This document shows positions 33,858 through 61,118 of a stretch of 64,000 nucleotides of DNA, piece by piece. A model generated the notes under the pieces. It had not been told where the DNA came from. It did no database searches and was given only the letters and a program-made list of their open reading frames with translations. The DNA is taken from positions 95,252 to 159,251 of the forward strand of contig RBZT01000657.1 in NCBI GenBank assembly GCA_003693705.1. Direction: 5' to 3'. Every line of letters starts with the position of its first letter. Positions within the stretch are counted from its first letter, which is position 1. Made by a program: the position numbers and the translations under genes. The stretch comes from Polymyxa betae A26-41. Lineage: Eukaryota; Protista; Endomyxa: Phytomyxea.

Positions 33858-33888
33858 GGGTCTAGGGTTTAGGGTAGGGTTAGGGTTT
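33858..33888 (+). promoter_or_regulatory. Interstitial telomere-like tract / telo-box cluster with five GGG runs (G4-capable)
   Basis: GGGTCTAGGGTTTAGGGTAGGGTTAGGGTTT, ~70 nt upstream of ATG 33958. Confidence 0.75.
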
Positions 33889-33957
33889 CTTCCGCTGATA
33901 TTCACAGATGTTGTTCATGATAGTCGATGTGGTATCCGTGATCTGATCTTGTGATTA

Positions 33958-36335
33958 ATGGCACCATCTAACGAGGCTTGGCTCAAACCAGCCATTCTAT
34001 CAGCATTATCATCAACTCCATCCAATTCACCAACCCTGTTGCCATCACAAATTTTTCTCTTACAATGCTCTCCTATTAATGGATCACCTATCACTCCTGT
34101 CCATGCTCTCCTTTCTGATAAACATACTCATATTAATGCTGTTATAAGTGTTCATGCTGGTCAACTATTCTGCAAGTAATCGCTTGACAATTCTCCGAAT
34201 AATTTCTAATTGTTTATGTAGGCGTCTTGAGCAATCCGGTTTGGGAATGTTAAGTCAGGCCCTCGTTGCATTAAAACATTATACGTTAATGCTGCAACAA
34301 TCTAATGGTAATAAGGAAGCTCTACCAAAGCTCTTAATTATGGTTGAAGAACTCAATTTTCTTTCACCGTGTCGAAATTTCCCGAAGACAACAACTCTAT
34401 TGGATGAAGATGAAGAAATCGCTTCCAGGATCCGTTATGTCTATCATGATTTTTTTAAAGAGCCCCGTCCTAAACCACCTGATCATTGTGACTATCGAAT
34501 CGATCCCGATGCCATTCAGCTGATTGTTCAGAATTCACATAAATCGGCTCTTGTTCCAGGTGATCATCTCCAGTCCTTTTAAGTATGACGTTATTGACCT
34601 AATTACAGGTTGGTCACAAATATCTCGACCTGCACATGATGATGACAAAGATGATGATACAATTGATTCGGAACCTGCTAAAGATCGCTCTATATCATCT
34701 GTAAGTTTGTATTACTTATAGATTCATATTACTGAAAGGTTTAATTGATAACAGTCTCCTAAACCTGCAGAGATGTCTTCATTGCAATTTCTGTCACCTG
34801 AAAAGATTATGAGATCATCTACAGATCTTGACTGTAAACAGCCAGAAATCGTCTCAGAGCCATTACAGGACGATGTCGTCATGAATGAGATCTCAAATGC
34901 AACACCAGAAGGCATTGTTAAAGATGACAATCTCAGAAATGTTGATGATGCCCTCCTTGGTAATATTGCTAAAGATAGGGAGATACCCCAATCAGAATCA
35001 GTTGATGTTGAACCAGCTCATGCAGATAACCCAGATTCTCGGATACAGCAGAATGGAGCCGACACGAATTATTCAATGCATCCAGAAATTGAAGTTATTG
35101 ATTGTATCGATGAGGATGTATTCCCCGGCGAGTTCACTCCTGGTCTCACTCAATTCGGATTAGACGATATCGAAGAATTAGATTTTCACACAGCGCTTGT
35201 TGAATTGCCCATCTTAATTGATCTAACGATTGCTTCTGATCAAGAGACTGATAGAACAAGTTTTAAGGTGTCAGTTAAGAAAGAGGTTATCTCTCCTAAG
35301 AGATCTCGGCCTTCTATTCATATCGAGTATCCTGACGAATCAGAACCTGCTGAGGAGATTATCAGACAACAGCCTGTTAATATTACTGTCGACAGTCGAG
35401 TTCCATCTGATAGTAACATTCCGGACCTTGATGCTAATGCAAACAAATTAGAAATCGCATCTGTGCATAACCTGCAATCAGAAACTGAGACTGCTCAGGG
35501 AATCGCTAAAAATCCAGAAAAGTCTGCCAAGGAGGCCATGCAGAAATCTGAAATTCAGCTCAAGATGCGGAAATCCGCTTCACTACAATCAGGATCAATA
35601 TCAATTCAGAACACTGGAACACGTTTGAAGAAATCAGGAGCGACGTCCTGTCGTCAGGAAAATGGCTCTCGTTCGAAGATGTCTGCAACTGCAACAACTA
35701 TTCAAAGAACTGACAATCATGCCAAGAATCTGGGATCCCAACACGCCGATATTCATTTAAAGGCTGCTATGGATAAGGACGCTGCTTCGTTGCCGACACC
35801 GGAACCTGATCTCAACAAGAACAAACAACTACAAGAAACGTGGAGAAAGCTAAAATCATCAGGCGTGCTGAAATGCCAATCTCACTCGAAAAGTCCAGGA
35901 TTACAATCGGATAGATCTAATAACGGAGACAAACGTCTACAACCTCACAATCAAACCTTCATGGAACCGATAAATACCGTCACAGCAAAATCTGACGAAG
36001 AATCGGGATCCAGAAAGCGACAGCAAAATAATGGATCTGTTAAGGCAGCGAAGCAAAACGCAGAGATCGTGCAAAAAGTGAGTAACCTTTCCGAAGCTCA
36101 GGCATATGCGAGTGAAATTTCGGAGACCCGATTCGACATGGTATCGTCGAGACCACAAAAGAAGCAGAAAATGGCATCGACGTCTGTTGATGTTCATGAG
36201 GGAGACAATAACCGTCTCGATTCACGTGAAAGCAACGAACCCGAATCTTCAAACACAAAGATGTTAACAAGTCACGATCTACTTCTGGCTACTCTGAAAT
36301 ATACAACTGCCAGGTTTAGGAGAAGAAAGCGGTGA
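33958..36335 (+). CDS. TPP1/Est3-like OB-fold protein with a long disordered C-terminus
   Basis: AWLKPAI...QIFLLQ...HALLSDKHTHINAVIS...ALVALKHYTL...PKLLIMVEELNFL parallels the TPP1 OB pattern PWIRELI...LLVSDGTHSVRCLVT...RLLLLQD...FYLQVDRFSLL. Confidence 0.7.
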
Positions 36336-36610
36336 TAATCGTAGGCTGCTATTTAAAAGCACCGTTGTAATATGTTTATATCCCCACTGAATATTTATTG
36401 CACGATATGATAATCGACAAAATATTCAAATCATTGTTGAATGAGCCCTGATCGTGGCTTCAAACATTGAAAATAACCCGCATGTCAATAAGGCAATAAT
36501 CAGGATTTCAAACTAATTGTTCTATTGATTTCACTTGTTAGCTCATAAGTTGTTTTAATACATCCACCAGATGCGTCTGTCTTTTGTGTCCCATTGTGAG
36601 GCGAACAGAT

Positions 36611-38134
36611 CTAGTCAAATACCTCGAACTCATCGAGAGATGAGTATTCGTCAGAGTCAAATCCCATTTCATCGTTATAATCGTTATCCTTGGACTGACC
36701 ATCATCTTGAGCAACTGTGTTGGATGCAGCTAACCTCTCGGCGGAATCGTGCAACATCTGATGCCAATCGCGCCTAGTATCAGCATTATTCTCGGGCTCA
36801 AATGGACCCATGGACATCCACGTCAACACGCGACGTTTCATAATTGATCGGATTTCAGCCAGGTCTTCCTCGCTTGTCCAACCCGATCTTCTATCACATG
36901 TAGACGTAGGGCGTGCATTGTTAACAACAGTTTGTAGATCGACTCCAGACAAATCGCAAAGCTGATAAAGGATGAAGCTTTGTTGAGGTGGTGCACTGAA
37001 ATCAATATCTGAAGGCAGCACAACAAGTCGAACATCGGGATGAGATGGGTTTAGCCTATAAAACATTAAAAGAAAGGACTCCAATGGAATTATCATCACG
37101 ATTACCCATTGAATACCTTCTTCGTTAAGTTCGACTTATTTTGAGCTGCCGCTTGCTGGTTACGTCTCTCAGCAACCCTGCTAATGAAGTCTTCGCGGAT
37201 CCGAATATCAATGCATTGATACTTTAAGCTGGATGGGTCTTTTCTGGGATCGTAACCATACCGACACCTAAACCATCTTTTTGAGCCAGGAACAAAACAA
37301 GACCAATGACAGACCAGAGCCCTCTCCAAGGACCGCCCTATCAATCATCAATAAACTTATCGAATGAGCACATTAAGCTAATCGTACTGAGAACCGGTAA
37401 GCGACACAATAAATATATCTGATAACACTTCGTCGATCTTGATTCGCCAAGCGCATCGTATGAAGCAGGAGACGCTTGGAGATGACTGGTCTTCTATCAA
37501 ATAGCTCTTTAATCTTCAACGTAACAGGATGATGAAGGGCTGCTTCTGATGCTGAGAATGAATTTGGTTCTGGTCCTTGAGGAACTTCAGCTGCATCGAA
37601 CGGGATCAAAGCGAATCGCGAAAACCGGTTATGATGATCGGCAAGGCGAGATTCGATTCGCTTACGCCGGGTTTCACCTGTTGCAGATTCTCGATATCTG
37701 TAGTCACGAGGTGTCGATATATTGGATAATGAAACAGGAGGTAATAGCTGGATCTCTTTGATGAATGGCGTCTTGTGTACAATTTGAAAATCAGATAAAG
37801 ACACAAAACGGGCAGTCTTGTTTACGCGACCGACAATACGAGGAATAATAGAGCCATCAGGGCGTCTTTTAACCTCCATTAAGAACGTGGTACTATCAGA
37901 AATACTGGCCTCAATCGGCGTACAGAACGGGTCGTCAGGACGAAGGTTTAACCGCAACGATGTCGTGGTGGTGGTTTCTTCCCGTTCGGCATCGACTGAC
38001 GACAAGGCCCTTGCAACGGTTTCTTCGCCACCGATAGCATCCAAAGCTTTATGTAGAAGCCGGACTCGGCCTGGAACTTCAACCGATACAAAATCACGAC
38101 AATCGATTGATAGCTGAAATGAGTCGACTGTCAT
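36611..38134 (-). CDS. GTF3C5: TFIIIC subunit tau95/Sfc1
   Basis: VEVPGRV, LRPDDPFCTPI, RF.SLSDFQ, LFDRRP, YGYDPRKDP...YQ, YQLCDL, C...SGW, acidic tail. Confidence 0.92.
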
Positions 38135-42801: not shown

Positions 42802-42860
42802 ATATTGTATTGATAAACTGCTACCTAGGTATAGTCAACGTAGCTAGGAAAGTTGCATGG

Positions 42861-42898
42861 TAGGGTTTAGGGTTTTGGGGTTAAGCCCACGGCCCCAT
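42861..42898 (+). promoter_or_regulatory. Telo-box-like tract followed by AGCCCA (site II-like), upstream of ATG13
   Basis: TAGGGTTTAGGGTTTTGGGGTTAAGCCCACGGCCCCA, ~100 nt before ATG 42982. Confidence 0.55.
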
Positions 42899-60110: not shown

Positions 60111-61118
60111 GTTTCTATACGGTGGTGTTTTTTCGTCCCGGACGCGGGGCGAGAATTGCGTCTATCCCCGCAGAAATAGTGCTACAGTTGATGTTAGTGA
60201 GCAGTAATTGGGCTGCGCCCTCTATAGAGTATAGAGCGACTACAGCTCTGGCTGGCTCACGGAGTTTCGTCGGGACTTGGAAATTTTTGGAAGTCAGGAA
60301 TTCTAGGTATCATTCAAAAAAAGCAATCACCCGCATTAAACTCGAACTCAGAACTTGACACAGGCAAACACTATAGTCTACCATTAAACCACGTTGCCGC
60401 TAATTGGTATTGTTAGACGGGAGAGGGTTTTGAACTGGAATGTGTTTGAAGAAGTGTTTTTATTTGATAGCATGCAAGCGGAAGGCAATGCTTCCGGTTG
60501 AATTAGCGTGAGTCAACGCTATTGATATCTCGAGATTGATCTAACAGCGCTCATATGCTAACAGGTATTTTGTTGTCGGTACGTGGTATACACCCTAAAG
60601 ACACCTAGAGTAAGCCCCTACAAACTTCCAAGAAAAAGTCCCTAAAAAAGCCCTAAACAAAACAATACCAGCCACTCAGACAGGAAGCCACTATAGACGC
60701 CGTCTCGCCGATGTGACAGATGTGTCTCTATCGAGGGCGCAGCCCATTTTCCAGTCAAGCAAGTTTCTCTATAACTGTAGGAGCGACGGATATGGGTCGA
60801 CGGATAATGTGACTCACTTTTCACTAATAACAACTGTAGCGCGGGGCGAGAACTGAGTCTATCGTATATCCCGGGCAAATAACCACCATTTACGCACTTT
60901 TTGTAATCCATTTTTCTCAATAACCAAAATGCTGTATAAAAATGTTTTCATATCAGCATGTGTACAATCCAACGATCTTTCTTTTTATGTAAAATTTTTT
61001 GGTGAAGCCTATTTGCCGTTCTCCAGAAATTGAATTCGAAAAAAGGTGCGTAGTGGTGGTTATTTCCCCGGGATATACGGTATCCCCGCGGGGCGAAAAA
61101 ACACCACCGGTTTCTATA
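60111..61118. mobile_element. Foldback/MITE-like element with nested inverted repeats
   Basis: CGGTGGTGTTTTTTCG (60120) vs CGAAAAAACACCACCG (61094); GCTACAGTTG.T.TTAGTGA (60181) vs inverse at ~60821; TGGGCTGCGCCCTCTATAGAG (60209) vs inverse at ~60726. Confidence 0.7.

What the first reader, a model, noticed from the sequence alone, without database searches (positions are those of the whole stretch)
33858..36335. Candidate shelterin TPP1/Est3 homologue with a telomere-repeat G-quadruplex tract directly upstream
Seen: five GGG runs of TTTAGGG/TTAGGG type on the sense strand ~70 nt before the ATG. The gene's first ~130 aa follow the TPP1/Est3 OB-fold pattern (W-[IL], LLSD..H.I.A, alternating beta strands, L.V..L.F), followed by a long disordered linker and a short conserved-looking C-terminal helix, which is TPP1-like architecture. 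Known: TPP1/Est3/TEBP-beta recruit telomerase and are hard to detect outside opisthokonts and ciliates. Inference: a divergent protist shelterin subunit whose promoter or 5' UTR carries its own complex's binding site, suggesting a possible telomere-sensing autoregulatory loop.
Basis: partly seen in the sequence, partly recalled or inferred. Interest (0 to 1): 0.8.

Follow-up and report, generated by a model that had tools for sequence, protein, structure and literature searches.

The report
Probable TPP1 gene with telo-box promoter
A sugar-beet root parasite (Polymyxa betae) has a gene that probably encodes the telomere protein TPP1, and the telomere-like repeats in front of it are an unusually long example of a promoter motif found hundreds of times in this genome, so a feedback loop special to this gene is possible but not shown.

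Summary
The genome matches Polymyxa betae (Rhizaria). A 28-nt tract of five GGG runs (33858-33885) lies 72 nt before an ATG, and contig ends carry the same mixed TTAGGG/TTTAGGG repeat. Spliced public contigs confirm a 4-exon, 742-aa gene and start about 30 nt after the tract, so the tract is probably promoter, not 5' UTR.

The protein is probably TPP1/Est3-like (about 0.75, not proven). Exon 1's only Pfam hit is TPP1 (E=0.17, below cut-off). Language-model neighbours are RPA70N, TEBP-beta and TPP1 OB folds. RPA1 and RMI1 have their own genes; POT1-like and TERT genes exist. No orthologue was found, and fold searches were uninformative.

The tract is not special in kind: 562 repeat dimers genome-wide against 9 controls. 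Similar sense-strand tracts lie about 100 nt before RIO1, ATG13, WD40 and RGS genes and inside an intron, with none at POT1 or TERT. This resembles plant telo-boxes; this scan noted the system before on other DNA of this genome. The tract is among the longest (2 of 43 have five runs), so autoregulation stays possible (about 0.12).

The parts
33858..33885 (+). Five-GGG-run telomere-like tract (long telo-box, G4-capable), probably in the promoter
   Evidence: lies between the end of the Lon transcript contig (33744) and the start of this gene's contig (33916/33918)
33916..33957 (+). Transcribed leader (minimum 5' UTR, about 40 nt)
   Evidence: contigs from two runs of one study start at 33916 and 33918; not a mapped start site
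33958..34175 (+). Exon 1 (aa 1-73): N-terminal helix and first strands of an OB fold, TPP1/Est3-like
   Evidence: sole Pfam hit PF10341, E=0.17, aa 8-67 on profile 4-77/158; ESM features: RPA70N 0.94, TEBP-beta 0.94, TEBP-beta/TPP1 0.88
34176..34221 (+). Intron 1 (46 nt, GT-AG)
34222..34559 (+). Exon 2 (aa 74-186): inferred second half of the OB fold, C-terminal helix, and a short hydrophobic segment where TPP1 has its POT1-binding motif
   Evidence: sequence pattern and own knowledge only; no Pfam TPP1 hit, no homologue found
34560..34608 (+). Intron 2 (49 nt)
34609..34700 (+). Exon 3 (acidic start of the linker)
34701..34754 (+). Intron 3 (54 nt)
34755..36335 (+). Exon 4 (aa 217-742): long low-hydrophobicity linker, acidic then basic, ending in a hydrophobic/basic segment
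   Evidence: no Pfam hit, no homologue
35214..35228 (+). LIDLT motif (aa 370-374) in the linker's most hydrophobic patch; resembles a SUMO-interacting motif
   Evidence: motif class from own knowledge, untested
36270..36332 (+). C-terminal 21 aa: leucine-rich putative helix plus RRRKR (possible TIN2/Poz1-type docking helix and nuclear signal)
   Evidence: function inferred by position only

Best explanation
The gene is probably the Polymyxa betae TPP1/Tpz1-type shelterin bridge: an N-terminal OB fold that would contact telomerase, an adjacent segment that would bind the POT1-like protein, a long flexible linker, and a C-terminal helix docking on the duplex-binding side of the telomere complex. 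Shown: gene structure, transcription and an OB-clan signal. Inferred: family and all interactions. The upstream tract is a long member of a genome-wide telo-box system. Short telomere-repeat clusters sit G-strand-sense about 80-120 nt before many start codons and in short introns, and most likely act as ordinary promoter elements bound as duplex DNA by a telobox-Myb (TRF/TRB-like) factor. Shown: abundance, and position and strand for five genes. Inferred: binding and regulatory role. The pairing of TPP1 with a long tract needs no gene-specific loop.
For: Protein: PF10341 is exon 1's only Pfam hit, collinear from the start of the profile. ESM features point to the RPA70N/TEBP-beta/TPP1/RMI1 OB group. 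Real RPA1 (E 5.6e-9, followed by DBD-A) and an RMI1-family gene (E 3.9e-10) lie elsewhere, and exon 1 does not align to the genome's own RPA70N. POT1-like (E 3.6e-4) and TERT (E 8.5e-13) genes exist. The layout matches TPP1 as described in PMC8653790: OB, adjacent POT1-binding domain, 50-700 aa linker, C-terminal helix. Tract: 562 TAGGGTTWAGGG against 9 reversed controls; 139 three-repeat matches against 1; about 16 tight four-run interstitial tracts. Same strand and distance before RIO1, ATG13, a WD40 gene and an RGS-domain gene; one fills a carbamoyl-phosphate synthase intron. Plant telo-boxes are the precedent (PMC3022908).
Against: The Pfam hit (12.2 bits, cut-off 26.5) is at the level of chance hits seen for other ORFs here (RGS, STAS, DUF488 at E 0.09-0.17). 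ESM recognition for exon 1 (1976) is below the tool's reliability mark and its top cluster is RPA70N-like. Exon 2 gave nothing in any search. Single-exon AlphaFold models had pLDDT about 46 and the exon 2 model was all-helical. No orthologue was found in about 52 kb of syntenic P. brassicae DNA. The tract is in the extreme tail of length (2 of 43 interstitial tracts have five runs); the rough post-hoc chance that some telomere gene has a four-run promoter tract is only 1-4%. I did not myself identify a telobox-Myb reader.
Confidence: 0.6

Rival explanations
1. TPP1-like gene under real telomere feedback. The five-run tract is a high-affinity site for a TRF-like Myb protein (or a G4 it binds) that partitions between telomeres and this promoter, so TPP1 output, and thus telomerase recruitment, tracks telomere length.
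For: One of only 2 five-run tracts among 43 interstitial ones examined; post-hoc chance about 1-4% for four runs; G4-capable (1.57). Human precedent: telomere-length-dependent TRF2 binding at the TERT promoter through G4 (PMC12483519; PMC6264879). An unchecked scan note reports telomere-like repeats before a TRF-like Myb gene (s1-665460).
Against: Four-run tracts occur before unrelated genes at the same position. None near POT1 or TERT. The scan covers very many windows, so such coincidences get selected. No conservation or binding data.
Confidence: 0.12
2. The protein is another OB-fold protein of the RPA70N/RMI1 group with a long disordered tail (for example a DNA-repair scaffold), not a shelterin subunit; the tract is a generic telo-box.
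For: Top ESM clusters carry Rep-A_N (0.94, 0.93), RMI1 0.81; the Pfam TPP1 hit is below threshold; there is no structural confirmation.
Against: Pfam gives no Rep-A_N or RMI1 hit for exon 1, while the true RPA70N scores 1e-9. RPA1 and an RMI1-family gene exist separately. No following DNA-binding OB domains. The N-terminal W-L..aI helix and the helix after the last strand fit TPP1/Est3 (own knowledge).
Confidence: 0.18
3. The tract (and the other short tracts) are neutral scars of telomerase healing or slippage that pile up in non-coding DNA and have no regulatory role.
For: Tracts also occur in an intron, in a repeat family and as long internal arrays; the degenerate units look eroded; about 52 kb of syntenic P. 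brassicae DNA has no TAGGGTT/AACCCTA.
Against: The same strand and a narrow distance (-77 to -122 from ATG) at five genes argue for positional selection, though five hand-picked genes is a small sample.
Confidence: 0.1

Closest known systems
TPP1/ACD (human), Tpz1 (S. pombe), Est3 (budding yeast), TEBP-beta (Oxytricha); Pfam PF10341 / PF07404
   Same: N-terminal OB-type pattern, weak PF10341 hit over the first half of the profile; OB, then short hydrophobic segment, then long linker, then C-terminal helix, as in TPP1 (PMC8653790); POT1-like and TERT genes in the genome.
   Different: Below the Pfam cut-off; TEL patch and POT1/TIN2 contacts untested; no homologue found among 1.8 billion representatives with exon 2; from Rhizaria, where my searches of the paper library found no TPP1 report. 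Est3 lacks the long tail, so it is TPP1/Tpz1-like rather than Est3-like.
Plant telo-box (AAACCCTA) promoter elements read by TRB1-3
   Same: Short interstitial copies of the organism's own telomere repeat, strongly over-represented, near gene 5' ends and in introns (PMC3022908).
   Different: Here often 2-5 tandem degenerate units with the G-strand as sense strand; the one placed by RNA contigs lies upstream of the transcript, whereas plant telo-boxes are densest in 5' UTRs. The reader protein is not identified and the link to ribosome-biogenesis genes is untested (RIO1 fits, others do not).
Telomere-length-dependent TRF2 occupancy of G4 promoters, including human TERT
   Same: G4-capable element in the promoter of a probable telomerase-pathway gene.
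   Different: No binding or expression data here; the element is a literal telomere-repeat tract; P. betae TERT itself has no such tract.
RPA70 N-terminal OB (PF04057) and RMI1 OB (PF08585)
   Same: Same OB group by language-model features; shared L.SD-type strand motif.
   Different: No Pfam hit to either; both families have their own genes in this genome; no DBD-A/B/C follows.

Membership tests
TPP1/Est3 (PF10341) | Profile match above the curated cut-off | tested here: inconclusive
   exon 1 alone 12.2 bits against 26.5, E=0.17, sole hit; exon 2 no hit; the domain is split by an intron and the joined search was left out
TPP1/Est3 (PF10341) | OB fold superposable on TPP1 2I46 / Est3 2M9V | tested here: inconclusive
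   single-exon models pLDDT 46; Foldseek, VIA and Atlas gave nothing meaningful; ESM features give the OB group
TPP1/Tpz1 | Architecture OB, POT1-binding segment, long variable linker, C-terminal helix | tested here: met
   composition profile against PMC8653790; met as layout only, not as sequence homology
TPP1/Tpz1 | Binds POT1 OB3; binds the TERT TEN domain through a TEL patch | not testable with these tools
   partner genes present; interaction untested
TPP1/Tpz1 | Orthologues in related genomes | tested here: inconclusive
   none found; not in the syntenic P. brassicae block; whole relative genomes could not be searched
RPA1 | Rep-A_N followed by DBD-A/B/C | tested here: not met
   no Rep-A_N or DBD hits; true RPA1 on contig C447
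RMI1/TDRD3 | PF08585 match | tested here: not met
   no hit; separate gene on C718
Telo-box promoter element | Identical to the organism's telomere repeat and over-represented outside telomeres | tested here: met
   mixed TTAGGG/TTTAGGG arrays at contig ends; 562 against 9 controls
Telo-box promoter element | Preferential location near gene 5' ends | tested here: inconclusive
   five genes at -77 to -122 on the sense strand, RPA1 at -207; no genome annotation available for a full count
Telo-box promoter element | Bound by a TRB/TRF-type Myb protein and needed for expression | not testable with these tools
   59 Myb matches in the genome could not be cut out; the strict KD[KR]WRN pattern found none
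G-quadruplex | Four or more G3 runs with short loops; folds in K+ | tested here: inconclusive
   sequence criteria met, score 1.57; folding untested; the tract appears not to be transcribed

The most novel reading that the evidence does not exclude
A rhizarian TPP1 whose promoter carries one of the genome's longest telomere-repeat tracts, read by a TRF-like Myb protein that is titrated by telomeres, giving telomere-length feedback on the telomerase recruiter on top of a telo-box promoter system evolved in parallel with that of plants.
Probability: 0.12. Interest if true: 0.7.

Novelty: new member of a known kind. Interest (0 to 1): 0.38.

Why it matters
If the protein is TPP1, a full-length OB-linker-helix TPP1 with POT1 in Rhizaria would extend the shelterin bridge beyond animals, fungi and ciliates and support an ancient origin with loss or divergence in plants (Arabidopsis lacks TPP1, PMC4199523). 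I could not check InterPro, so automatic annotations in other protists may already exist. The genome-wide telo-box system in a non-plant lineage is the broader result, and this scan had already noted it many times.

Tried and rejected
Blank or uninformative: word searches with exon 2 and exon 4; full HMMER search of 1.8 billion representatives with exon 2; PDB sequence searches (the RGS hit at E 0.5 is chance-level); ESM Atlas with exon 2; PF10341 six-frame search of the genome (nothing passed the first look); metagenome scans; AlphaFold of single exons and four fold searches; NCBIfam; 2026 raw-read runs X5 and X9 had no reads. Synteny: the P. brassicae gene directly after Lon is an unrelated membrane protein, and no exon matched in about 52 kb. 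Rejected: tract in the 5' UTR (contigs start after it); RPA1 or RMI1 identity; a special hairpin in the intergenic region (z +0.78). The excess of GT just before tracts (15 of 42) was not counted as proof of intron location, because GT also continues the repeat.

Full report
Source. The window is G000:C482:95252-159251 of a 27,085,814-bp, 1001-contig assembly. The published Polymyxa betae draft has 1,001 contigs and 27,085,946 bp (PMC6328671), and the neighbouring TFIIIC5 gene's best named relative is from Plasmodiophora brassicae at 48% identity. I take the organism to be P. betae (Phytomyxea, Rhizaria).

Observation. Five GGG runs lie at 33858-33885 on the + strand, 72 nt before the ATG at 33958. 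It is the only four-run G4 pattern in the window. A Markov model fitted to the window gave 0.095 four-run tracts per 64 kb and no five-run tract in 200 simulations. Arrays at contig ends (C97, C125, C355, C371) are mixed TTAGGG/TTTAGGG, so the tract resembles the organism's own telomere repeat. P. brassicae uses T4AG3 (PMC11191646).

Gene. Splice-site arithmetic gave four exons and 742 aa. Contigs of two public runs from one study skip exactly these three GT-AG introns, so they are transcript-derived. The upstream Lon protease contig ends at 33744 and this gene's contig starts at 33916/33918, so the tract sits in the 171-nt gap, about 30 nt before the assembled 5' end. That favours promoter DNA over 5' UTR, but contigs cannot prove a start site.

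Protein family. By the operators' rule I searched exon by exon and left out any search or fold of the joined protein; the OB domain is cut in half by intron 1, which weakens every test. Exon 1's only Pfam hit is PF10341 TPP1 (12.2 bits, E=0.17, cut-off 26.5), aa 8-67 on profile positions 4-77. Hits of that strength arose by chance for other ORFs, so this alone is weak. ESM features put exon 1 next to clusters carrying Rep-A_N (0.94), TEBP-beta (0.94), TEBP-beta/TPP1 (0.88) and RMI1 (0.81), with recognition below the reliability mark: an OB fold of this group, family unresolved. Exclusion helps. RPA1 is on C447 with its own RPA70N (E 5.6e-9) and DBD-A, an RMI1-family gene is on C718, and exon 1 does not align with the genome's RPA70N. 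A POT1-like gene (C990; PF02765 E 3.6e-4, C-terminal cysteine pairs) and TERT (C940) are present. The layout fits TPP1 as described in PMC8653790: N-terminal OB, adjacent POT1-binding domain, a 50-700 aa linker, a C-terminal helix. From my own knowledge, untested: the strand-by-strand pattern and the helix after the last strand resemble TPP1 more than RPA70N, and the segment at aa 164-174 resembles the end of the human POT1-binding motif, whose Tyr306, Val308 and Leu313 insert into POT1 OB3 (PMC5394241). Exon 2 and exon 4 found no relatives, single-exon models were low-confidence and fold searches were meaningless. I put TPP1/Tpz1-type at about 0.75.

Orthologue. The window is partly syntenic with P. 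brassicae CP145420.1 (WDR70, BT1, Lon, TFIIIC5), but no exon matched in about 52 kb around Lon and TFIIIC5. Promoter conservation, the key test of the autoregulation idea, is therefore open. That stretch has no TAGGGTT or AACCCTA at all.

The tract in its genome. TAGGGTTWAGGG occurs 562 times against 9 for the reversed control; a three-repeat pattern 139 times against 1. Most listed sites are isolated and interstitial. About 16 tight four-run tracts lie outside telomeric arrays. Tracts sit G-strand-sense at -77 to -122 from the ATG of this gene, ATG13 (same window, 42861), RIO1, a WD40 gene and an RGS-domain membrane-protein gene; RPA1 has a single box at -207. One fills most of a 51-nt intron of carbamoyl-phosphate synthase, placed by the reading frame on both sides. 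Others belong to a repeat family. No multi-repeat tract was found in 7-8 kb around TERT or POT1. This is the picture of plant telo-boxes, short telomere-repeat copies enriched near gene 5' ends (PMC3022908) and read by TRB Myb proteins. Many first readers of this scan noted the same in other pieces of this genome; my own counts were made independently of those notes.

What remains for autoregulation. Of 43 interstitial three-repeat tracts examined, 29 have three G runs, 12 four and 2 five, one of the two being this one. Assuming about 10,000 genes, 8-30 long promoter tracts and 10-15 telomere genes, the chance that some telomere gene has one is 1-4%, before allowing for the number of windows scanned. 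There is a human precedent: TRF2 partitions between telomeres and the G4-bearing TERT promoter according to telomere length (PMC12483519). An unchecked note reports repeats before a TRF-like Myb gene in this genome; I could not fetch it. Against: unrelated genes carry four-run tracts at the same position, and POT1 and TERT carry none. By established knowledge TPP1 reaches DNA through POT1, which needs a single strand, so any loop would run through a duplex-binding Myb factor. I give feedback about 0.12.

Mechanism. Shown: an expressed 742-aa gene; a G4-capable telomere-repeat tract upstream of the assembled transcript; a genome-wide excess of such tracts. Inferred: the protein bridges POT1 to the duplex-binding complex and recruits telomerase; the tract binds a telobox-Myb factor as a general promoter element.

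Verdict. Observation confirmed, interpretation partly supported. A probable new member of the TPP1 family from a supergroup where my paper searches found no report (InterPro not checkable), with a long but not unique telo-box. Interest 0.38.

Noticed in passing
window 42860-42883: Second telomere-like tract about 100-120 nt before the ATG (42983) of an ATG13-like gene (PF10033, E 3.9e-4), same strand as the gene.
   Followed up: yes
L095:1491-1541 (G000:C567): A 51-nt intron of carbamoyl-phosphate synthase made largely of a four-run telomere-like tract; the frame reads ADK|VYFDPVT across it. L003, L035, L050 and L054 look like introns that begin GTTAGGG.
   Followed up: partly
L096, L098, L099 (C668, C895, C786): A repeat family carries the same 4-6-run tract followed by a shared sequence; possibly the end of a mobile or subtelomeric element.
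   Followed up: no
G000:C649:100-320, C665:134-175, C871:198-256: Long telomere-repeat arrays near but not at contig ends, with unique DNA on both sides (interstitial arrays or assembly joins).
   Followed up: no
window 35214-35228: LIDLT followed by acidic residues in the linker, like a SUMO-interacting motif (own knowledge); of note because fission-yeast Tpz1 is regulated through SUMO.
   Followed up: no
window 36335-36800: The transcript contig runs on into the convergent TFIIIC5 gene (3933-nt contig), suggesting overlapping 3' ends in an unstranded assembly.
   Followed up: no
L073 / G000:C990:1091-4264 (-): POT1-like gene (PF02765 weak hit, C-terminal OB with two cysteine pairs), many short exons; likely partner.
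   Followed up: partly
L069, L084, L085, L101, L102 (P. brassicae CP145420.1:503-554 kb): Partial synteny with the window (WDR70, BT1, Lon, TFIIIC5) but different intervening genes; no TAGGGTT/AACCCTA in about 52 kb, so the telo-box excess may be Polymyxa-specific.
   Followed up: partly
window 60593-60657: Several degenerate CCCTA(AA) motifs on the opposite strand in a non-coding stretch.
   Followed up: no
L087:61-1395 (-), G000:C714: Membrane protein with a C-terminal RGS domain (E 1.7e-14), 7TM-RGS-like, with a four-run tract before its start.
   Followed up: partly
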